Assembly: GCA_965235115.1 (NCBI GenBank)
Contig: OZ249451.1
Location: 12,214,001-12,278,000, forward strand
Length of the DNA stretch: 64,000 bases
From: Laetmonice hystrix
Taxonomy: Eukaryota
Reading direction: 5' to 3'
The notes below the pieces were generated by a model. That model did not search any database. It was not told the DNA's origin and saw nothing but the letters and a program-made list of their open reading frames with translations. The number at the start of each line of letters is the position of its first letter. The first letter of the stretch is position 1. The position numbers and the translations under genes are program-made. Shown piece after piece: positions 241 to 12,890 of this stretch.

Positions 241-988
241 ATGTCAATCCTGCTAGGTGTGGCCATACCTTGGCATGTTGGCTCTACATGTAGAGAATAG
301 TTCTTGGAACTAAACCATCCTACTATTAGGTCTACATGGATGTTTGTTACGGTGTTTGACCATCACACCTGTACGAGAGGCCTACATTCAACTTCCTCCA
401 TTTCAGCAATATGCACTGGCTGATTCAGATTCACGAGAGGGGTATCAACACGATATACCTTTTAATCGTAGTCCCCTTGTGTAAAAACCTTCTGGTATGT
501 AGGCCTCTGCTCTGTCTTCCTGACAGCCGACTATTGTAGGAAGTATACGAATCACGAATTCGGAATTGGAACAGCACACGGTCTATAGAGCTCGCACCGG
601 TTTATTCATTTATCTGGACCAGTGTAACTAAATATCGGAATCCCCTCGTATTTATCTCTTTATTAGATTGTGGAGCAAAAAACAACAGGCGTCAGTTTAC
701 GGACTGCACAGCCACAGGTGTCCTTCAGGATTAAAAAAAACCCAAAGTAGTGACCAAGTGTGACTGGGTAGTGATACCTTAAATATGTCTGGCACAATTA
801 GAAACTTGAATGCATCAAGTTTGAAGTAGATGACGAATGCAATGTTTATCTAAAGGGAAACAAACTATTTGAAGCCAAGTTGGATTGAACAATTAACTAT
901 AGTATGGATTTCAATGTGATTTCTTTGTATTGCTTCCAGTAGGTTATCACCGACGCTTTGACCTTGACGTGTGCTTGACGACCTTGCC

Positions 989-3676
989 ATGGCGTCCAGT
1001 ATTTCGACGAATGCTCTAACCGACAAGACTGTCCTCTACAAGTACCTGTCTCTGGACCAGCCCGAGGACAAGGTCCAAGTCATGTATGTCTGGATCGACG
1101 GTTCCGGGGAACAGCTCCGGTCGAAGACAAGGACGCTGGACGCGGAGCCTCTCTGCCCGCAGGGTGAGCGTGGGCCACAATAGAAAGCTGGAACTTACAA
1201 TTTAACCTTTAGAGCCACCCACACTGTCTAGTTCGTTACAAAGTATTTCATAAAAACGCATTTCAGCCTTAAACATTTTATGACCTTAGACATAAACTTG
1301 AGGAATGAAGACATGCAAACTTTAGGCTTCAAAATTTAAGGCATTTCACCTTCCAAACTTTAGGACTTTAGCTGTACAAACTTTGGAACTCTAGACGGCC
1401 AAACATTGGAACTTTAGGCTTCCAAAATTAAGGTGTTTCGCCTTCCAACTTCAGGACTTTAGCCTTCAACCCCTTAGAACGTTAGAGTGACTTTTGCTAT
1501 CCTAATTTTACGACGTTAATTAGCCTTGCAAACATTAGGAGATCAGAAGTCCGAACTTTAGAACAGACGCTTTCCAAACTTTAGGGTTCCATGCAGCCTT
1601 CAAACCGGGATCATATTTAGCAGTCTCTGTCCACCTCAGATTGTCCCATCTGGAACTTTGATGGATCAAGTACGGGTCAGGCCGACGGTAAGAACTCGGA
1701 CGTTTACCTGAAACCGGTGGCCATCTTCAAGGACCCCTTCCGATTGGGCAAAAACAAACTCGTCCTTTGTGAATGTCTCGATCATGAGAGGAAGCCTGTT
1801 GGTAAGATATTCCCGGAATTGTGTAGTGTTGGCGGATACTGTATCCTTGTACTATAATAAAATCAAGCAACGAAAACAAGGTATTCGACACTGGTGGGAG
1901 ACATTGTCGAAGATTGGGCTCTAAAATGGAAACATGCCCGTGCATTTAAAAAGAAAAATCGCTCACTCACTCTCAGTCATGGCGCCAGGAAAACGCCGAA
2001 CACTAGGACAACTTCCGTTCCAGATTCCAATTTCCGGTACAAGTGCATGGTTGCTATGAATGAAGCTGCGCATGCGCACCCGTGGTTCGGTATCGAGCAG
2101 GAGTACACGTTACTGGACCAGGACAACCGGCCGTTTGGATGGCCCAAAAATGGTTTCCCAGGACCTCAGGGTACGTTAGCCGGGAGACCGGATGTTACCC
2201 CCTCCCCTCCACAAATGGCATCCTTGTCAAGAAATGTATTACTGATTTAGGGCGCGTGTGATTACATTAACTGTTGCGAGGTAGTATACAGTCAGATCTC
2301 GGTAATTCGCTGACTTATTTTAATCTGATCTTAAAGCGACTCCAGAATGACCCTTGTTTTTGAACCCTAGAAATCTATAACAACCTTTGCTGTCTGACCC
2401 GGGATCATGCTGTTGGACCCCATCATATTAATTTATCCCCAGGTCGGTACCACTCTGCGGTAGGCGCCAACAAGGTGTACGGTCGGGCCATCGCCGAGGG
2501 TCACTATCGGACGTGTATGTATGCCGGGATAACCATCGGTGGCACCAACGCCGAGACCATGCCAGCTCAGGTACGGGTCAAGGTCAAGGGCACAGCACAA
2601 GGTCACGTGAAGGGCAATCTTAGGTTCTGGCTACAATCAGTAGTGGGAGTTTCACTATTTCTAACGACCTATCCGTTCTGTTTCAGTGGGAGTTTCACTA
2701 TTTCTAACGACCCCTCAGTTCCGTTTCAGTGGGAGTTTCACTATTCCTAACTAGTCCTCCGTTCCGTTTCAGTGGGAGTTCCAAGTTGGGCCATGTGAGG
2801 GGATAGAGATGGGAGACCAACTCTGGATGGCCCGGTACCTACTCCATCGAGTGGCCGAGGATTTCGGCGTGATCGTTTCCTTCGATCCCAAACCCATGCC
2901 TGGAGACTGGAACGGTGCGGGAGCTCACACCAACTACTCAACCAAGGAGATGAGAGAGGAGGGCGGCATAAAGTGAGTCGAAACATCACCTGGTGGCTTT
3001 GTGGTGTACTAGGGAGTTGAAACAGTTCACGGGATCAACAACAGGGTCTCCTTTAAGGTACAATGTGGGCGACAAAAGTGTCGACCAGTCGGGAGAATTT
3101 GTCGCCCATGTAGGGAAAGATTGAATGACGAGACAAGACGTGTCAATATGTATCTATTAACAAATTAACATTGACTACATTCTGCCTTCACCGGTAACGG
3201 TAGGACAGGATGTACGGAAGTCGGTCAGTTTGTATTGTATATTCTCGGGGACACCAAACTGGGTATCTATTGGTCAGTTTTAATCTCCGTTTATTGACTT
3301 CCGGTTCAGACACATTGAGGAAGCCATTGAGAAGCTCCGCAAACGTCACACCCTCCACCTCTACTACTACGATCCAAAAGGAGGCAAAGACAACGAGCGC
3401 CGTCTGACGGGACTTCACGAAACTAGCAGTATGACGGACTTCTCGGCAGGGGTCGCTAACCGCGGGGCAAGCATCCGTATCCCACGGCCGGTCGGGGAGG
3501 AGGGCAAGGGGTACCTGGAGGACCGGAGACCGGCTTCTAACTGTGATCCCTACCGGGTGACAGAGATCATCGTCCGGTCGACCGTCCTTGGCGAGACCTC
3601 ACTCTTCCCAGAAACAGGCGAGCTAGGCCTAAAAGAGAACATCCCCGTTTCAAAAGTCTGTATCAACGAGGAATAA
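989..3676 (+). CDS. GLUL: Glutamine synthetase II, copy 1 (392 aa, 6 coding exons; variant active-site loop)
   Basis: Exons 989-1163, 1640-1801, 2024-2170, 2443-2570, 2773-2972, 3310-3676. All are GT-AG and phase-compatible, total 1179 nt. GSII motifs: [88 protein letters not shown]. Confidence 0.96.
1310..1600. repeat. Degenerate AACTTTAGG/CTTCCAAA minisatellite in GS intron 1 (paralogous tract about 6390-6700)
   Basis: Recurrent CCTTCCAAACTTTAGG-like units in both GS copies. Confidence 0.6.
2641..2780 (+). repeat. 43-bp tandem repeat containing the GS exon 5 acceptor
   Basis: AG|TGGGAGTT recurs with AG ending at 2643, 2686, 2729 and 2772. CTAAC and a pyrimidine tract precede the last three AGs. 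The paralogous array is at 7991-8089. Confidence 0.9.
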
Positions 3677-4333
3677 TGTTTCTAGATTCATCAATTCAAC
3701 ACAAAAGTGGTCGGATACGCCGCCTTTAGGCCACACGCTCCACTGCTACACAACCTAGATCTATCAGCCTATGTCGCGGTTATACGTGGCTATCATCTGC
3801 CACTGATTTAATCAAACACAAAATTATGATTCGAAGTGCATATTTTCAAAGCATTTGAAACCGTAGGCTTTAGGCTATTTCTTGACCTGAACCAATATGT
3901 TAGATGATAGGGCTATAATAGTAGGCAGTAGTTTATAACAGAAGGTAATTGGGGGCATCTTAATTAATTGCCTCTTATATAACGAGACTAAGCCGTTGCT
4001 TGTTCATTCCCTGTGTATAACGGTATTTTAACAACACCATAGGCCTAGATCCCTATGCTTAATGTGGGAAACGGGAGGCGGCTGAGCCTATAATATATAG
4101 GCTTTTGCTTTTGCTGATCATTTACTTTCCTGTCTAAAATTAATCAGGGATAATATGGGTAGGCCTTATCATATACCTACTACATTAGCAATGTCACCAA
4201 TGTTAGTAGACAATGAAGGTTCTGAGCCTGTTACAACTAATATACAAGTGCAAGTAGCTTTTAAAAAATAGTATATGCCGAGAAATCTAGATCTGTTATG
4301 TAGGTAGATAATATGCCTGTAAAAATCAGTTTT

Positions 4334-4784
4334 GCCGGTCGGGGAGGAGGGCAAGGGGTAGGCCTAGCTGGAGGACTGGAGGCCGGCTTATAACTGTGAT
4401 CCCTCCCGGGTGACGGAGACCGGTGTCCGCCGTAAGTCCGAGCCGCATGACCACTGGTGGCGACACATTGCGGGCAGCATCCGAACTATAGGTACTCCAG
4501 TTGTGAGCCGGACTGAGGATTGACATGTAATCTAGTGGGCCTATACAAGTCTCTATCAATAGGGCCTACGTCTGGTTTATTACATGGACGGACATTAATG
4601 TTTCTATATAATGCATGATTTAGTGAGTGAGAAGGAATCCCCTCGGTGGCTTCTTCTAGAAATGACACTGCATAGAATGTAAGACAATATTACCCTCTCT
4701 CTCTTCATCGAAGAGGCCAACAATAAATACACGTACAACCAGTACACATACAGTCCTAATAGGCTTACATTCATACACATACCG
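4334..4784 (+). pseudogene. Decayed duplicate of the GS terminal exon 3' end plus 3' UTR
   Basis: Aligns by eye to 8829-9310 (and to 3487-3598). It has a 6-nt net insertion creating GGG TAG, a 30-nt deletion of the [10 protein letters not shown] codons, and further UTR homology. Confidence 0.85.
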
Positions 4785-4822
4785 ACGCTTGTTGAAATTT
4801 GGCTCACCATTGACTCCTTGCT

Positions 4823-5162
4823 CACTGGGGGATCCAGGGGGGCCAAGGGGCCCGCCCCCCCTTAAATTTTCCTTTTCCCCGCTTTTTTTTAAAGAAGATG
4901 CATTATTCGGACCCTGAAACCAGTATTCCAACAAAATTCTTTTATAAAAGCCTCCTATATTATACGTGATAGTAACATCGGGCCAAAAGGGGCCTCCTCG
5001 GTTATCCAGGAGCAACATAACTCTGGGCTGTTGCGCATTGAAATAGATCAAAAGGGGCCCAAAATGGCTATAAGCGCAATAAAATCATGCCGAGCGTAGC
5101 GAGGCTAAAAATTTTTCAGGTGCCCCCCCCCCCCCCTTATCAAAATCCTGGATCCCCCACTG
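4823..5162. mobile_element. MITE-like non-autonomous DNA transposon
   Basis: 16-bp TIRs CACTGGGGGATCCAGG / CCTGGATCCCCCACTG (1 mismatch). 6-bp direct repeat CTTGCT at 4817-4822 and 5163-5168. The paralogous site near 9428 has a single CTTGCT (empty site). Confidence 0.85.
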
Positions 5163-5420
5163 CTTGCTCATTGGGATCTTGTGGGGTCATATTATTCTAC
5201 AGTGATTTATTCAGTCCCACTGAAGATATCGGGGCTATTTTCCTTTCTTCAAGGTCATAGGTCAACATTGGCGATGATGAACATCCGGTTCCTGTAGAAC
5301 TGGTCAACTGACACGTGTTCTATCACGGACAAAATATTATTGGCCTAAACCGTCAGATATACTGGTAGCCTTTAATCTTTAATGTCCATTTACAATCACT
5401 CAATCTGGGCCAAATATTTA

Positions 5421-5566
5421 CCCAGAGCCTCAGCCCAAAGCCTCAACCCAAAGCCTCAACCCAAAGCCTCAACCCAGAGCCTCAACCTAAAGCCTCAACC
5501 CAGAGCTTCAACCCAAAGCCTCAACCCAGAGCCTCAGCCCAAAGCCTCAACCCAGAGCCTCAACCC
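5421..5566. repeat. 13-bp minisatellite (CCCA[A/G]AGCCTCAA) x11
   Basis: Directly counted units from 5421. Confidence 0.95.
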
Positions 5567-6062
5567 GGTGCCGCCGGCCAGTCGCACGCGCCAGGCGACC
5601 TACGTTTCGATATTTATTTAAGATTTATTTCTAACTTTCCAAAAGTCGCACTACTATACTACTACTATAACTTATGAACGGCCTGTGAATTCAAGGTGAC
5701 CTTAATATTATCTGCTACTTCTTACAACGAAGTGGTCATTTCGAACATTTTCGAACGCTACCATAGGCGACCACGGTTTGACGAAGACGTTTGGCTGAGT
5801 TTGTGACCGACTTTCACACTTCGATGATCACGGTACTATCTGGGCCAAATATAGGACTACATGTACTTCATTGCTGAAGTCTCGACCGAGCGGATTGGGA
5901 GTTGGAATCCCGGTACAGTCGGCCTCTTTGAGGTGAGTGATACAACTCTGTTGAATATTTCCTCCACAGTAATCTAAATGATCAGAAGTCATCAGTTTTC
6001 ACTTTGATTCCAGTAGGTTCTCACCGACGCTTTGACCTTGACGTGTGCCTAACGACCTTGCC

Positions 6063-8998
6063 ATGACGTCCAGTATTTCGACGAATGCTTTAACCGACAA
6101 GACTGTTCTCTACAAGTACCTGTCTCTGGACCAGCCCGAGGACAAGGTCCAAGTCATGTATGTCTGGATCGACGGTTCCGGGGAACAGCTCCGGTCGAAG
6201 ACAAGGACGCTGGACGCGGAGCCTCTCTGCCCGCAGGGTGAGCATGGGGTCACAATAGAAAGCTGGGACTTACAATTTAACCTTTAGAGCCACCCCCAAT
6301 TTCTAGTTCGTTACAAGGTATTTCATAAAAACGCATTTCAGCCTTAAACATTTTATGACCTTAGACATAAACTTGAGGAATGAAGACATGCCAAACTTTA
6401 GGCTTCGAAACTTAAGGTATTTTACCTTTCAAACTTTAGCCGTACAAACTTTCGAAGTCTAGACATTGGAACTTTGGGCTTCCAAAATTAAGGTGTTTCG
6501 CCTTCTAACTTCAGGACATTAGACTTCCAAACTTTAATATTTTAGTCTTCATCCCCTTAGAACTTTAGAATGACTTTTGCCATCCTAATTTTACGACTTT
6601 AAACTACAAAACCTCAGGATATTAGCCTTGCAAACATTAGGAGATCAGAAGTCCAAACTTTAGGACAGAAGCTTTCCAAACTTTAGGGTTTCATGCAGCC
6701 TTCAAACCGGGATCATATTTAGCAGTCTCTGTCCACCCCAGATTGTCCCATCTGGAACTTTGACGGATCAAGTACGGGTCAGGCCGACGGTAAGAACTCG
6801 GACGTTTACCTGAAACCGGTGGCCATCTTCAGGGACCCCTTCCGATTGGGCAAAAACAAACTCGTCCTTTGTGAATGTCTCGATCATGAGAAGAAGCCTG
6901 TTGGTAAGTTACTCCCAGGAGTGTGTGGTGTTTGGTAAGTTACTCCTAGGAGTGTGTGGTGTTTGGTAAGCTACTCCCAGAAGTGTGTGGTGTTTGGTAA
7001 GTTACTCCTAGGAGGGTGTAGTGTTGGCGGATACTGTATCCTTGTACTATAAGAAAATCAAGGAACGAAGAAAGGTATTCGAAATTGGTGGGAGACATTG
7101 TCGAAGATTGGGCTCTAAAATGACAACAGCTCAAAGTTACTCTGTAAATTTCTCTGTTTGTCAAAATACATACCCCTCCTAAGTCAGACGGTATATCAGT
7201 GAAAAGGAATTCCTGAAACCGACGTCCTAAGACACCAAAGCCTACCTGGATTGTCCTGTGAAGCCAACCACTTATTCCCTCCCTCACTCACCCGCTCAAT
7301 CACTCCCCCACTCACTTACTACTCAATGTCAGTCATGGCGTATGACAACTTCCGTTCCAGATTCCAATTTCCGGTACAAGTGCAAAGATGCTATGAATGA
7401 AGCTGCGCATGCGCACCCGTGGTTCGGTATCGAGCAGGAGTACACGTTACTGGACCAGGACAACCGGCCGTTTGGATGGCCCAAAAACGGTTTCCCAGGA
7501 CCTCAGGGTACGTTAGCCGGGAGACCGGATGTTACCCCCTCCCCTCCACAAATGTGATTACATTAACTGTTGTGAGGTTGTATACAGTCAGATCTCGGTG
7601 CTGACTAATTTTTATATAATGACCCTTGCTGTTGCACCCTAAATCTAATGACCTTTGTTGTGTGAGCTCATTCTGTTTGACCTCATCGTATTAATGTGTT
7701 TCCAGGTCCGTACTACTGTGGGGTAGGCGCCAACAAGGTGTACGGTCGGGCCATCGCCGAGGGTCACTATCGGACGTGTATGTATGCCGGGATAACCATC
7801 AGTGGCACCAACGCTGAGACCATGCCAGCTCAGGTACGGGTCAAGGTCAAGGGCACAGCACAAGGTCACGTGAAGGGCAATCTTAAGTTCTGCCTACAAT
7901 ACTTTAATAACATCCATGCATGTATAAACTGTACCCGATTACTTGTCAAATAAATTCAGTATACTCAGCCCACCCCGCGGTCCGTTTCAGTAGTGGGAGT
8001 TTCACTATTTCTAACGACCCCTCCGTTCCGTTTCAGTAGGAGTTTCACTATTTCTATCACCTGTCGGTTCCTATATTTCAGTGGGAGTTCCAAGTTGGGC
8101 CATGTGAGGGGATAGAGATGGGAGACCAACTGTGGATGGCCCGGTACCTTCTCCATCGAGTGGCCGAGGATTTCGGCGTGATCGTTTCCTTTGATCCCAA
8201 ACCTATGCCTGGAGACTGGAACGGTGCGGGAGCTCACACCAACTACTCAACCAAGGAGATGAGAGAGGAGGGCGGCATAAAGTGAGTCAGGCGACACCTG
8301 GTGGCCTTCTGGTGGGCTCATGTCAGGGAATGGCCGTGACGTCATAGAAATGAGCGATAAGATGCTAAACCTAACCTTTCCCGTTACCTAACACTTATTA
8401 TCGCTCATTTAGTGACGTCACCATTCCCCGACTTGTGCCGACAAAAGTGTCGACCAGTCGGGAAAATCTGTCGCTCAGGCAGAGAAAGATTTAATGAGGA
8501 GATGACAAGGAACAAATTAACATTGACTACATATCCTGTGTAACGGTTACGGTAGGACAGGATGTACGGAAGTCGGTCAGTTTGTATTGTATATTCTCGG
8601 ATACACCAAACTGGGTATCTATTGGTCAGTTTTAATCTCCGTTTATTGACTTCCGGTTCAGACACATTGAGGAAGCCATTGAGAAGCTCCGCAAACGTCA
8701 CACCCTCCACCTCTACTACTACGATCCAAAAGGAGGCAAAGACAATGAGCGCCGCCTGACGGGACTTCACGAAACTAGCAGTATGGCAAACTTCTCGGTA
8801 GGGGTCGCTAATCGCGGGGCAAGCATCCGTATCCCACGGCCGGTCGGGGAGGAGGGCAAGGGGTACCTGGAGGACCGGAGACCGGCTTCTAACTGTGATC
8901 CCTACCGGGTGACAGAGATCATCGTCCGGTCGACCGTCCTTGGCGAGACCGGTCTCCGCCGTAGGTCCGAGTTGCACGATCACTGCATCCCCGAGTAG
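6063..8998 (+). CDS. GLUL: Glutamine synthetase II, copy 2 (382 aa, 6 coding exons; canonical GPYYCG)
   Basis: Exons 6063-6237, 6742-6903, 7361-7507, 7706-7833, 8082-8281, 8662-8998. The first five coding exons match copy 1 in length; total 1149 nt. All GSII motifs are intact. Confidence 0.97.
6901..7024 (+). repeat. 31-bp tandem repeat x4 containing the GS copy 2 exon 2 donor
   Basis: TTG|GTAAG at 6901, 6932, 6963 and 6994; a single unit in copy 1 near 1799. Confidence 0.9.
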
Positions 8999-10456
8999 GT
9001 GGCGACACGTTGCGGGCAGCATCCGAACTATAGGTACTCCAGTTGTGAGCCGGTCTCGGGATTGACATGTAATCTAGTGGGCCTATACAAGTGTCTATCA
9101 ATACGTCTGGTTTATTACATGAACGGACATTAATGTTTCTATATCATGCCTGATTTAGTGAGTGAGAAGGAATCCCCTCGTTGTCTTCTTCTAGAAAGGA
9201 CACTGCATAGAATGATTATTACCCTCTCTCTTCATGGAAGAGGCCAACAATAAATACACGTACAACAAGTACACATACAGTCCTAATAGGCTTACATTCA
9301 TACACATACCGCTGCATACAGTATTGCATACAGATATCGTTAAAGGAAGTAATTGATTTTTTTTTTTGCTTCCCGAGGACAAACATGAGACAGTAAAACT
9401 TGTTGAAATCTCGGTCATCGTTGACACCTTGCTCATGTATCTCGTGGGGTGATTTTATTCAACAGTGATTTATTCAGTCCCACTAAAAATATCTGGGTTA
9501 CTTCCCTTCCTTCAGGGCCATAGGTCAACATTGGCGATTGGTAGTCTGACAAAACATTATAAACCATCATATATAATATTAGCCTTCAATAATGTCCATT
9601 TACAATCACTCACCTGGCCAACTGTTTATAGTTCTAACAGTCATGGCCTTATTTAATATTTTGATACAGTGCGGGGTAGTTCGCTTGTCACGTGACGACG
9701 AGAAATGCGGCTTGGGGGGCCCAAACTGGCGACAGCCAAATTCCGGTTCCGGTTTTTTTAGCCTTGGTACCCATTGAAGAACTTTCCCTCAACTTCAATC
9801 CGTGATAACTCCACATTTATTGTTCTCTTATTAATCAAACTTGCTATAATGAAAGACTCGATAATCGAGTCTGGAAACGTTATATTAACGTCATCCAGTC
9901 TTTCACTGGTTATTCTCGTACTCTGACATTGCTGTGAGATTTGTTGCATGGGCTCAGTCGGTCTACCGCTCGCCCATTATGAGATACACCATGTGTACTC
10001 ATGGGCCATCGTACATAGTGTCACTGAGTGAACGACCAGAGACTGGGCAGGGATCGGTTTGAAGATTGCTTTAATTTTCGTCACGTCGTAAAACTATAAT
10101 CACTCAATCTCATACTCTGTCGGAGCTAGGAGTGAAGCTGGCAAGTCACTGGCCCGAGTAAATCCAGCTACATCTCTACATGGTAAGTTTAAAACTGTTA
10201 TAAGTTATGCCCCTTTCTCCATTAACTCTTTTTTTCGCTCTGTGTAGAGAGGTAACAATAACTAGCGAATCGTTAAAGATTAGTGCGAAGAGGAAACGAT
10301 TGGACATTTAAACACATTCGTATTCCGTAATTCATTTAAATTACATTTGTACACGGAATAACACAATTCACAATTGCATTAAATCCTAAAGGACATTGTT
10401 GATTCGATGATTCAGTTGAGAAGAATCTTGACAGGTATGTACAGTTTTTAAAGATG

Positions 10457-11747: not shown

Positions 11748-12890
11748 ATGGTTTCCTATCAAATAATCGCGCTGTGCGTTCTCACTGTTCCGTGCGTGCT
11801 CATCTATCTCTACATCGATCAAGTTCGCCATGTTTTCCCGATCTATCGTCATGCGAAGAAGAACACCACGAAAGGAGCATCACCGCGCACCATTCTGATG
11901 TGGTCCTCTCTGTGGGGTCAGTCCCAGAACATGGCGCCGGGCGACTTCCGCCGGCTGAATTGTCGCGTCTCTGATTGTTACGTCACATACGACCGGCGTC
12001 GGTTTAACGTCAGTGACGCAGTGGTGTTTCTATTTGAGTCTGCAAGTGACGTACCACCAACGTGGAGACGACCTCCAGGCCAACGCTGGGTGTTCTTCAC
12101 GATGGAGGTGCCCTCGATATCAGTCGAAGCGAAGCTAAGGCACTGGAAGAACGTCTTTAACTGGACGATGACGTATAAAAAGGATTCCGACATTGTGGTT
12201 CCGTATGGATACAAAAAACTCAAATCCCATGTTCAAATGAAAAACAGAAATTATGCTGCAATCATGAAGGCTAAGCCAAAGATGGCTGCGTGGATGGTTA
12301 GTCACTGCTCCGCTCCTAGTAAACGTGACCTTTACGTCAGGGAACTAATAAAGGCAGGTCTTCATGTGGATATCTACGGGGAGTGTGGTCCCCTTCGATG
12401 TCCACGATCTAAGGAGAAACACTGCATGAAGCTACTCAATCAGACCTACAAGTTTTACTTGTCTTTTGAGAACAATTTATGCGTTGATTACGTTACTGAG
12501 AAACTGTTTAAGGTACTTAATCTGGATATCATCCCCATATACCGAGGAGGCGCACACTACACTCGGATCAACATCCCACCATCTCGGTTTATTAATACCG
12601 CTGACTTCCCCTCGGCCGCTAAACTTGTCAACTACTTGAAATATCTCGATGACAATCCCGAAGAATACACCAAATACTTTTTACATCAGAATAATTATAA
12701 ATACGAGTGGCTGGGTGAGGTTAAATATCATACACCACTTTGGTGTTCCCTATGTGAGCGGCTTCACAACCCCAGCGAACCCGTTAAGTTTTATGGTAAC
12801 CTTGGTTACTGGTGGAATCATAGGAAAGATTGTCACGAGGCTAATGACCTTCACACGTCATTGTCTCCGCCCTTCGGGGCACGTGGATAA
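11748..12890 (+). CDS. Alpha-1,3-fucosyltransferase (GT10 family), type II membrane protein, 380 aa, intronless CDS
   Basis: N-terminal hydrophobic anchor; motifs QRWVFFTMEVP, FNWTMTYKKDSD, WMVSHC, VDIYGECG, YKFYLSFENNLCVDYVTEK, YLKYLDDNPEEYTKYF. Upstream acceptor TTTTCAG at 11702 implies a 5' UTR intron. Confidence 0.95.
   Translation: MVSYQIIALCVLTVPCVLIYLYIDQVRHVFPIYRHAKKNTTKGASPRTILMWSSLWGQSQNMAPGDFRRLNCRVSDCYVTYDRRRFNVSDAVVFLFESASDVPPTWRRPPGQRWVFFTMEVPSISVEAKLRHWKNVFNWTMTYKKDSDIVVPYGYKKLKSHVQMKNRNYAAIMKAKPKMAAWMVSHCSAPSKRDLYVRELIKAGLHVDIYGECGPLRCPRSKEKHCMKLLNQTYKFYLSFENNLCVDYVTEKLFKVLNLDIIPIYRGGAHYTRINIPPSRFINTADFPSAAKLVNYLKYLDDNPEEYTKYFLHQNNYKYEWLGEVKYHTPLWCSLCERLHNPSEPVKFYGNLGYWWNHRKDCHEANDLHTSLSPPFGARG

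What the first reader, a model, noticed from the sequence alone, without database searches (positions are those of the whole stretch)
2443..2459. GS copy 1 rewrites the conserved GPYYCG active-site loop to GRYHSA while keeping all other catalytic residues
Seen: CCG TAC TAC TGT GGG (copy 2, 7708-7722) versus CGG TAC CAC TCT GCG (copy 1): four single-base changes in five codons, all non-synonymous. By manual comparison the copies differ at about 27 of 1101 shared coding nt and 13 residues, so 4 of 13 fall in this pentapeptide. Established: GPYYCG is near-invariant in GSII. The second Tyr (residue 165 here, human Y162 by my alignment) is, from my recollection of mammalian GS structures, part of the ammonium pocket. 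Metal, ATP and glutamate ligands (EQE, E..E, NGAGxH, RRLTG.HET, NR...R, EDRR) are intact in both copies. Inference: copy 1 may be neofunctionalised to accept a different amine nucleophile, i.e. a gamma-glutamyl-amine ligase of the sort reported biochemically in molluscan ganglia, or to have altered ammonium affinity.
Basis: partly seen in the sequence, partly recalled or inferred. Interest (0 to 1): 0.78.

Follow-up and report, generated by a model that had tools for sequence, protein, structure and literature searches.

The report
Expressed glutamine synthetase paralog, rewritten ammonium loop
One of two tandem glutamine synthetase genes is real, transcribed and correctly spliced. It has replaced three almost never-changing residues of the strand that holds the ammonium ion, so it is a good but unproven candidate for an enzyme with changed substrate handling.

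Summary
Copy 1 (989-3676, +) reads G-R-Y-H-S-A where copy 2 (6063-8998, +) reads G-P-Y-Y-C-G. The copies differ at 27 of 1101 shared coding bases and 13 residues, four of them in this pentapeptide (chance about 0.001).

It is not an assembly error. Contigs of three DNA runs cover the loop without a difference.

Copy 1 is not silent. A spliced contig in a fourth run joins exons 3 to 6 at GT..AG and carries copy 1's letters through the loop. No copy-2-specific RNA contig was laid.

All seven other type II paralogs in this genome keep GPYYCG. Of 189 full-length homologs, 188 have Pro, 188 Tyr and 189 Cys at these positions.

The His replaces mammalian Y162, an ammonia ligand whose Ala mutant keeps under 5% activity. 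The loop also lies on the subunit interface. All other metal, ATP, glutamate and ammonium residues are intact.

Copy 1's exons have no indels, against about 25 expected from the flanking non-coding rate. However, its branch carries most of the amino-acid changes, so neutrality is not excluded.

Best reading: a young, expressed paralog with an altered nucleophile pocket. Recent inactivation remains a serious rival. The specific gamma-glutamyl-amine ligase idea is untested. An earlier unchecked note calls the genome an annelid, not a mollusc.

The parts
989..3676 (+). GS copy 1, a type II glutamine synthetase gene of 392 aa. Exons: 989-1163, 1640-1801, 2024-2170, 2443-2570, 2773-2972 and 3310-3676 (stop at 3674-3676).
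   Evidence: The gene model has GT-AG at every intron and an intact ORF. PF03951 matches exon 2 and PF00120 matches exon 5. A spliced RNA-type contig joins exons 3 to 6.
2443..2459 (+). Rewritten loop G162-R163-Y164-H165-S166-A167. The G162 codon is split, with its first base at 2170. Changed bases are 2446, 2451, 2455 and 2458. In mammalian numbering the changes are P160R, Y162H, C163S and G164A.
   Evidence: DNA contigs cover 2188-2488 and an RNA contig covers 2442-2566, all without other letters.
6063..8998 (+). GS copy 2 of 382 aa. Exons: 6063-6237, 6742-6903, 7361-7507, 7706-7833, 8082-8281 and 8662-8998. It has the canonical GPYYCG at 7706-7722.
   Evidence: DNA contig 7525-7751 shows no other letters, and no copy-2-specific contig was laid from run X4.
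3599..4333 (+). End of the copy 1 coding sequence (tail [25 protein letters not shown], to 3676) plus 3' UTR. This is the ancestral 3' segment shared with two paralogs and is missing from copy 2.
   Evidence: It is 75-81% identical to the 3' ends of the paralogs at C21:10.40 Mb and C3:11.02 Mb. The paralog tail reads [22 protein letters not shown]. It is transcribed: X4 contigs cover 3569-3942 and 3914-4633.
4334..4455 (+). Decayed second copy of the 3' part of exon 6, with stop codons and indels, lying in copy 1's 3' UTR.
   Evidence: It is 84% identical to copy 2 8831-8997 with three indel blocks. The coding twin 3487-3598 is 100% identical to copy 2 8839-8950.
2640..2772 (+). Tandem copies of the intron-4 acceptor plus the first bases of exon 5. 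Only the last acceptor is used.
   Evidence: Sequence, self-matches and the RNA joint 2570>2773.

Best explanation
Copy 1 is a genuine, transcribed, correctly spliced, young tandem paralog of a lineage-specific type II glutamine synthetase subfamily. dS to copy 2 is about 0.057.

Its reading frame has been kept by selection. Four non-synonymous substitutions have rewritten the strand G-P-Y-Y-C-G. This strand carries the ammonium-ligand Tyr (mammalian Y162) and contacts the neighbouring subunit.

The ATP, metal and glutamate sites are untouched, so the first half-reaction (forming gamma-glutamyl phosphate) should still work. This is inference. The second half-reaction, binding and attack of the nitrogen nucleophile, is what the changes bear on. 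The most likely result is a ligase with weakened or altered ammonium handling and possibly a different preferred nucleophile.

Shown here: the bases, the expression, the splicing, the conservation statistics and the indel-free exons. Inferred: that the protein is active, and what it accepts.
For: The bases are real and show no alternative letter in three DNA runs. A spliced contig in run X4 (2085-2169 | 2442-2566 | 2769-2972 | 3310-3432, GT..AG joints) carries copy 1's letters, and contigs run on through 3569-4633. No copy-2-specific RNA contig was laid.

The ORF is intact and every intron has a canonical splice site.

The exons have 0 indels in 1101 nt and 2.5% mismatch. The aligned non-coding DNA between the copies has 36 indel events and 8.6% mismatch in 1566 nt. 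About 25 exon indels would be expected, and the probability of none in one lineage is about 3e-6. The decayed twin of the exon-6 end shows what neutral decay looks like at this locus.

The loop changes hit columns that read P in 188, Y in 188 and C in 189 of 189 homologs. All other differences between the copies lie in variable columns. The clustering has p of about 0.001.

All seven other paralogs keep GPYYCG. D63, S66 and E305 and all metal, ATP and glutamate residues are intact.

Y162 binds ammonia (PMC7764910). Bacterial gamma-glutamylpolyamine synthetases replace the equivalent Tyr179 (PMC8998196).

One other complete GSII, from a metatranscriptome, has His at this position and is otherwise canonical.
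Against: Y162A leaves under 5% activity in mammalian GS (PMC6601560).

P160 and C163 are practically invariant and lie on ring interfaces (PMC6274088). The changes may therefore simply damage folding or assembly.

The copy-1 branch has 9 non-synonymous against 2 polarised synonymous changes. Copy 2 has 3 against 7 (Fisher p = 0.03). Copy 1's omega is about 0.4 under a clock and up to about 1.3 with polarised counts, so neutrality is only marginally rejected (binomial p about 0.05).

Eight GSII paralogs give redundancy, which makes loss tolerable.

No ortholog with this loop was found (a blank that says little). Expression evidence comes from one run of one individual, kept as contigs, and that run is not on record as RNA.
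Confidence: 0.4

Rival explanations
1. Copy 1 has recently been inactivated. In a genome with eight GSII genes, copy 1 took a disabling hit in the ammonium loop, either a single multi-nucleotide mutation or a few quick substitutions after the first one. The hit was fixed by drift. Copy 1 is still transcribed only because too little time has passed for further decay.
For: The copy-1 branch carries most of the amino-acid changes (9 N to 2 S, against 3 N to 7 S for copy 2), with omega up to about 1. Y162A nearly abolishes activity. There are seven other paralogs with a canonical loop. The duplicate is young, with dS of 0.057. No relative with the same loop was found.
Against: Four independent neutral hits within 13 bases, all non-synonymous and all on the nucleophile strand, are improbable (p about 0.001). 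No donor or template for a one-step event exists in the genome or nearby. The exons are indel-free against about 25 expected. Copy 1 is the copy seen in RNA, and copy 2 is not. Outside the loop, all copy-1 changes lie in variable columns.
Confidence: 0.33
2. Copy 1 is a catalytically weak or dead subunit kept for another role. Active sites of GSII form between neighbouring subunits and the loop lies on the intra-ring interface. Copy 1 may therefore co-assemble with other GSII paralogs and tune their activity, or bind glutamate and ATP without finishing the reaction.
For: The loop residues Y162 and C163 are computed interface hot and warm spots that contact R41' and C42' of the neighbouring subunit. 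The 139-160 loop makes the inter-ring contact (PMC6274088). The ATP, metal and glutamate sites are kept. The gene is expressed and its frame preserved.
Against: There is no evidence of hetero-oligomers. The partner residues (R44, S45) are the same in both copies. The hot-spot values come from computation on the human enzyme.
Confidence: 0.17
3. The loop is an artefact: an assembly or consensus error, or a collapsed or chimeric copy.
For: The three DNA runs come from one sample, probably the one used for the assembly. They are therefore not independent individuals.
Against: Contigs built from the raw reads of three DNA runs and one RNA-type run all carry the same letters, with no alternative at 2443-2459. 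The RNA contig matches copy 1 at the discriminating positions of four exons.
Confidence: 0.02

Closest known systems
Canonical animal type II glutamine synthetase (e.g. human GLUL, Drosophila GS2; PDB 2QC8, 7CPR, 8DNU)
   Same: The two-domain architecture is the same (PF03951 + PF00120). The protein is 73-78% identical to invertebrate GSII. All metal, ATP and glutamate residues and three of the four ammonia ligands are identical. The exon-4 peptide aligns end to end with solved GSII chains.
   Different: The fourth ammonia ligand, Y162, is His. Its neighbours P160, C163 and G164 are Arg, Ser and Ala. Pro, Tyr and Cys are replaced in at most 1 of 189 homologs surveyed.
Bacterial GS-like gamma-glutamyl-amine ligases (Streptomyces GlnA2/GlnA3 gamma-glutamylpolyamine synthetases; GmaS, PuuA)
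   Same: They keep the ATP, metal and glutamate sites while the ammonium pocket is substituted. Tyr179, the equivalent of Y162, is Asp150 in GlnA2 and Ala169 in GlnA3 (PMC8998196).
   Different: Those are old, diverged GSI- or GSIII-type families with several pocket substitutions and proven amine substrates. Copy 1 is a GSII only 3.5% different from a canonical sister. It keeps D63, S66 and E305 and has no tested substrate.
Copy 2 and the six other GSII paralogs of the same genome
   Same: Copy 1 has the same six-exon structure as copy 2 and is its sister in the tree (support 98/92). It belongs to a lineage-specific clade with C21:10.40 Mb, two C3 genes and C7.
   Different: Copy 1 is the only one of the eight without GPYYCG. 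In the 113-271 region all change lies on the copy-1 branch (length 0.07 against 0). The 5' flank differs from about 60 nt upstream of the ATG. The C-terminal tail also differs.
Metatranscriptome GSII P0250 (JGI 3300018994) with GPYHCG
   Same: It has the same Tyr-to-His change at the ammonia-ligand position in an otherwise canonical, complete GSII.
   Different: It has only that one change. It is a single contig of unknown organism and could be an error or a rare allele.

Membership tests
Type II glutamine synthetase (GSII) | N-terminal beta-grasp domain (Pfam PF03951) | tested here: met
   The exon 2 peptide scores 42.6 bits against a cut-off of 33.4.
Type II glutamine synthetase (GSII) | Catalytic domain (Pfam PF00120) | tested here: met
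   The exon 5 peptide scores 33.2 bits against a cut-off of 24. The genome scan also hits both window copies.
Type II glutamine synthetase (GSII) | Full-length colinear similarity to known GSII proteins | tested here: met
   The sister copy 2 (96.5% identical to copy 1 over the shared 367 residues) is 77.6% identical over 375 residues to P0175 and 73% identical to named gastropod and annelid GS. Copy 1 aligns colinearly with the same 189 homologs.
Type II glutamine synthetase (GSII) | Metal ligands E134, E136, E196, E203, H253 and E338 (mammalian numbering) | tested here: met
   All are identical in copy 1 and copy 2.
Type II glutamine synthetase (GSII) | Glutamate- and ATP-binding residues (N248, G249, R299, R319, R340, W130, G192, P208, S257, R262, R324, Y336, R341) | tested here: met
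   All are identical in both copies.
Type II glutamine synthetase (GSII) | Complete ammonia-binding set D63, S66, Y162 and E305 | tested here: not met
   D, S and E are present, but Y162 is His in copy 1. The residue roles come from PMC7764910.
Type II glutamine synthetase (GSII) | Glutamine synthetase activity and decameric assembly | not testable with these tools
   This needs recombinant protein. A spliced protein could not be passed to the structure tools by reference.
Gamma-glutamyl-amine ligase (GS-like, amine nucleophile) | Ammonium-pocket Tyr replaced while ATP, metal and glutamate sites are kept | tested here: met
   Copy 1 has Y to H with the other sites intact. The precedent is Tyr179 to Asp or Ala in GlnA2 and GlnA3.
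Gamma-glutamyl-amine ligase (GS-like, amine nucleophile) | Demonstrated ligation of glutamate to an amine other than ammonia | not testable with these tools
   This needs an enzyme assay.
Gamma-glutamyl-amine ligase (GS-like, amine nucleophile) | Descent from the GSI/GSIII-type GS-like families (GlnA2-4, PuuA, GmaS) | tested here: not met
   Copy 1 is sister to a canonical GSII gene.
Pseudogene | Frameshift, premature stop or broken splice site | tested here: not met
   The ORF is intact at 392 aa with GT-AG at all five introns.
Pseudogene | No transcription | tested here: not met
   There is a spliced contig and there are 3' UTR contigs in run X4.
Pseudogene | Neutral pattern of change | tested here: inconclusive
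   There are no exon indels against about 25 expected, which argues against neutrality. The copy-1 branch has 9 N to 2 S changes and omega of 0.4 to 1.3, which does not exclude recent relaxation.

The most novel reading that the evidence does not exclude
Copy 1 is the first animal type II glutamine synthetase caught in the act of changing its nitrogen nucleophile. It would be an active gamma-glutamyl ligase whose Arg/His/Ser/Ala strand makes it prefer something other than ammonium, such as a biogenic amine or an amino-acid-type amine. This would give a molecular entry to the gamma-glutamyl conjugation of serotonin, histamine and dopamine described biochemically in earthworm and Aplysia nervous tissue (references cited in PMC7954447, PMC4472778 and PMC6454038). 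To my knowledge, not checked here, the enzyme for that conjugation has not been identified.
Probability: 0.1. Interest if true: 0.8.

Novelty: new variant of a known kind. Interest (0 to 1): 0.47.

Why it matters
The GPYYCG strand is among the most constant parts of eukaryotic glutamine synthetase and carries an ammonia ligand. An expressed paralog with a preserved frame, three of these residues replaced and the rest of the catalytic machinery untouched is a natural experiment on how the nucleophile pocket of GSII can change.

If copy 1 is active with a different amine, it would show that GSII can evolve new gamma-glutamyl ligase specificities, as bacterial GS-like enzymes have. It would also offer a lead to the unidentified gamma-glutamyl-amine synthetases of annelids and molluscs.

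If copy 1 is inactive, it is a dated snapshot of the first step of gene death in an expanded family: transcription and frame intact, active site gone.

Only four residues separate the two loops, so swapping them between copy 1 and copy 2 is a clean and cheap test.

Tried and rejected
Donor for the loop. A 23-mer of the copy-1 loop, allowing up to 3 mismatches, occurs only at its own place in the 627-Mb genome. No k-mer spanning two or more changed bases lies nearby on either strand. Gene conversion and template switching are therefore unsupported.

Relatives with the same loop.
- A representative search with the copy-1 exon gave mostly exon-sized fragments. The closest variants were GSYHCG and GPYNCG, in what look like broken fragments.
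- A search with the open frame around exon 4 found no candidate. That is a blank and says nothing.
- The window's own full-length proteins were not among the hits.

Scaffold alignments A1 and A3 placed short exons wrongly and were discarded. A2 was used instead.

Corrected reading of the tail. I first took copy 1's C-terminal tail for a new insertion and copy 2's tail for the ancestral form. Searches reversed this. Segment 3599-4333 is the ancestral 3' end shared with two paralogs. Copy 1 lacks five codons (GLRRR), and copy 2 lost the whole segment.

Taxon. The protein-atlas look-up of the neighbouring fucosyltransferase gave no useful taxon.

Structure. The spliced protein has no reference, and long sequences may not be typed, so no model of copy 1 was made. 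Whether R163 points into the pocket is unknown.

Lengsin-like ORFs. Fourteen ORFs matching PF00120, each about 400 aa in a single large exon, were considered as possible relatives. Twelve were fetched and read. They are GSI/lengsin-like, not GSII, and are irrelevant to the loop.
Full report
WHAT IS THERE

The first 10 kb of the window hold two head-to-tail copies of an intron-containing type II glutamine synthetase (GSII) gene on the + strand. The duplicated unit runs about 930-5420 and 6004-9630. I built both gene models from the sequence.
- Copy 1: exons 989-1163, 1640-1801, 2024-2170, 2443-2570, 2773-2972 and 3310-3676, giving 392 aa.
- Copy 2: exons 6063-6237, 6742-6903, 7361-7507, 7706-7833, 8082-8281 and 8662-8998, giving 382 aa.

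Every intron is GT-AG and both frames are open. Exon 2 matches Pfam Gln-synt_N and exon 5 matches Gln-synt_C above the curated cut-offs.

THE OBSERVATION

Copy 1 reads GT CGG TAC CAC TCT GCG at 2443-2459. Copy 2 reads GT CCG TAC TAC TGT GGG at 7706-7722. The peptides are G-R-Y-H-S-A and G-P-Y-Y-C-G.

Four of the 13 lie in the pentapeptide. With 13 changes placed at random in 367 residues, the chance of such a cluster is about 0.0013.

The peptide aligns end to end with solved GSII chains. In the 373-residue mammalian chains its first residue (Pro) is residue 160, so the second Tyr is Y162. I used a 373-residue vertebrate GS as a ruler. By that ruler all six metal ligands, the glutamate and ATP residues, and the ammonia ligands D63, S66 and E305 are identical in both copies. 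Only Y162 and its neighbours differ.

IS IT REAL AND IS IT EXPRESSED?

Four public runs from one sample hold the stretch. I laid them on 1900-7899 at 99% likeness.

Three runs behave as DNA: they cover introns and intergenic sequence. Each has a contig spanning 2188-2488 with no other letter, and no alternative letter is listed at 2443-2459. Copy 2's loop is likewise covered by a contig at 7525-7751.

The fourth run (X4) is not on record as RNA but behaves as RNA. One 537-nt contig lies on 2085-2169, 2442-2566, 2769-2972 and 3310-3432. Its three GT..AG joints fall exactly at my exon borders and are absent from the DNA runs. Across the four pieces it has no other letter in exon 4 and one other letter in all. 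It therefore carries copy 1's states at nearly all positions that tell the copies apart. Further X4 contigs run colinearly through 3569-3942 and 3914-4633, covering the end of the coding sequence and a long 3' UTR.

On copy 2, X4 has depth only over a stretch of exon 3 that is identical in both copies. It has none on exons 1, 2 and 4 (all).

In summary, the bases are not an assembly error, and copy 1 is transcribed and correctly spliced. In this one library copy 1 is the copy seen.

Three caveats apply. All runs come from one individual, probably the one assembled. Contigs show presence, not absence or level. Exons 1 and 2 of copy 1 lay outside the 6-kb stretch I could lay.

HOW UNUSUAL IS THE LOOP?

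The genome holds eight genes with this exon. The seven others all read GPYYCG.

Among 189 full-length GSII proteins collected with two database searches, the six-residue motif is distributed as follows:
- GPYYCG in 176
- GPYYCA in 8
- GPYYCS in 2
- GPFYCG in 2
- YEFYCG in 1
- GPYHCG in 1

By column, Pro is present in 188, the second Tyr in 188 and Cys in 189. Gly is present in 179, with Ala in 8 and Ser in 2.

So G167A is an ordinary variant. R163, H165 and S166 replace residues that practically never change. The single other His (P0250) is a complete and otherwise canonical GSII from one marine metatranscriptome contig.

Of the 13 differences between the copies, only the three loop changes fall in the 103 near-invariant columns.

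WHAT THE LOOP DOES

- PMC7764910 states that D63, S66, Y162 and E305 bind ammonia in human and dog GS.
- PMC6601560 reports that Y162A leaves under 5% of activity.
- PMC6274088 places Y162 and C163 on the intra-ring subunit interface, contacting R41' and C42' of the neighbour. They are computed hot and warm spots. It also makes P160 the end of the loop that forms the inter-ring contact.
- In both window copies the partner residues are R44 and S45.

The strand thus belongs both to the nucleophile pocket and to the assembly interface.

As a precedent for change of function, the Streptomyces gamma-glutamylpolyamine synthetases GlnA2 and GlnA3 keep the ATP, metal and glutamate sites but replace the equivalent Tyr179 by Asp or Ala (PMC8998196).

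HISTORY

In a tree of residues 113-271 the two copies are sisters (support 98/92). They sit inside a lineage-specific clade with paralogs on C21 (10.40 Mb), C3 (two genes) and C7, and with two unnamed transcript-derived proteins from other data sets. This clade lies apart from the canonical GS on C8 and from mollusc GS. In this region all change is on the copy-1 branch (length 0.07 against 0).

Nei-Gojobori values between the copies are dS 0.057 and dN 0.016, a ratio of 0.28.

I polarised the differences with the nearest paralogs.
- Copy-1-derived: K89, R109, M121 (ancestral state ambiguous), V122, R163, H165, S166, A167 and G194, plus two synonymous changes.
- Copy-2-derived: A313, N314 and V317, plus six or seven synonymous changes.
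- Four synonymous sites and residue 2 are ambiguous.

The split of 9:2 against 3:7 is uneven (Fisher p = 0.03). Copy 1's omega is about 0.4 if synonymous change is shared equally between the branches. It is up to about 1.3 with the polarised counts. Neutrality on that branch is rejected only marginally (binomial p about 0.05).

There is a further oddity. The copy-1 changes all lie in exons 2-4 and nearly all copy-2 changes lie in exons 5-6. I cannot explain this.

EVIDENCE FOR CONSTRAINT

The aligned non-coding DNA between the copies has 8.6% mismatches and 36 indel events in 1566 nt. The 1101 exon bases have 2.5% mismatches and no indel. About 25 indels would be expected for both lineages, and the probability of none in one lineage is about 3e-6.

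A decayed second copy of the exon-6 end sits in copy 1's 3' UTR (4334-4455). It is 84% identical to copy 2, with stop codons and three indel blocks. Its coding twin (3487-3598) is 100% identical to copy 2.

Copy 1's frame has therefore been protected for most of the time since duplication. This does not date the loop changes, which could be very recent.

ORIGIN OF THE CLUSTER

The 23-mer of the new loop, allowing up to three mismatches, has no other place in the genome. No nearby sequence on either strand could have served as a template.

Three of the four changes are C/G transversions, and three are at second codon positions. The remaining routes are an untemplated multi-base mutation or successive substitutions under selection. 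Independent neutral hits are unlikely.

THE C-TERMINAL TAILS

I first read copy 1's tail as an insertion. That was wrong. Segment 3599-4333 is 75-81% identical to the 3' ends of the C21:10.40 Mb and C3 paralogs. The C21 paralog's tail reads [22 protein letters not shown].

Copy 1 ([16 protein letters not shown]...) has lost five codons. Copy 2 ([18 protein letters not shown]) has lost the whole segment and runs into the second repeat. Both tails are derived, and neither touches catalytic residues.

INTERPRETATION

My estimates for the four readings:
- Functional with an altered nucleophile pocket: about 0.40. In its favour are the real and apparently homozygous bases, expression and correct splicing in a library where the canonical sister is not seen, the intact catalytic set, the indel-free exons, and substitutions focused on the one strand that holds the nucleophile.
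- Recent inactivation, still transcribed: about 0.33. In its favour are the near-loss of activity in Y162A, the structural role of the invariant Pro and Cys, the excess of amino-acid change on the copy-1 branch, the redundancy of eight paralogs, and the absence of any relative with this loop.
- A non-catalytic or modulating subunit: about 0.17.
- Artefact: about 0.02.

Gamma-glutamyl conjugation of amines is described in earthworm as well as in Aplysia (references cited in PMC7954447, PMC4472778 and PMC6454038). A change this young cannot, however, be the conserved enzyme behind that chemistry. The added Arg and His would, if they face the pocket, disfavour cationic nucleophiles. That last point is inference, since no model could be made.

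An earlier unchecked note of this scan calls the genome an annelid and describes a GmaS-type gene 4.9 Mb downstream. My PF00120 scan shows hits at that place. I did not verify the taxon.

VERDICT

This is a new variant of a known kind, of moderate interest, and it can be tested cleanly by swapping the loop between the two copies.

Noticed in passing
G000: C10 (20.6-30.3 Mb, several), C7:36.90 Mb, C5:4.42 Mb, C29:11.41-11.44 Mb, C19:2.66 Mb (L001-L012): At least 14 lengsin-like (GSI-type) ORFs of about 400 aa, each in a single large exon, match nearly the whole of PF00120. Together with 8 GSII genes and GmaS-type hits on C21, this is a large expansion of GS-fold ligases in one animal genome.
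   Followed up: partly
window 8662-8998 (copy 2 exon 6; codons 313, 314, 317): Copy 2 has its own cluster of derived changes (T313A, D314N, A317V) five residues before the glutamate-binding Arg. The A317 column reads Ala in 157 and Ser in 24 of 189 homologs, and never Val. No copy-2-specific RNA contig was seen in run X4.
   Followed up: partly
window 2640-2772 and about 7990-8081: Intron 4 of both copies ends in two or three tandem copies of the acceptor plus the first bases of exon 5 (ttcagTGGGAGTTTCAC...). These are decoy acceptors. The RNA contig uses only the last, genuine one.
   Followed up: partly
window 3599-4455 and 8950-8998: The 3' ends have been rearranged. Copy 1 keeps the ancestral 3' segment minus 5 codons, plus a decayed duplicate of the exon-6 end. 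Copy 2 has deleted the segment, apparently between the two repeats, which gives a different C-terminal tail.
   Followed up: yes
window codons 66-198 versus 155-321 of the two GS genes: The polarised changes are spatially segregated. All copy-1-derived changes lie in exons 2-4 and nearly all copy-2-derived changes lie in exons 5-6. This may be mosaic conversion with paralogs or different constraint on the two halves, and is unexplained.
   Followed up: partly
window 4700-5299 (ORF on the - strand 4656-5051): A very high-copy repeat lies between the two GS genes, with DNA word depth of 10,000 to 76,000 against about 60-100 in the flanks. It is also present in the RNA-type run.
   Followed up: no
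window 5420-5566: A tandem repeat with a 13-nt register shift lies just upstream of copy 2. Homology between the 5' flanks of the two copies ends about 60 nt before the ATG, so the copies have different upstream regions.
   Followed up: no
window 11748-12890 (+): An intact single-exon ORF of 380 aa is a GT10 alpha-1,3-fucosyltransferase by protein-atlas features (score 0.97, PF00852/PF17039).
   Followed up: partly
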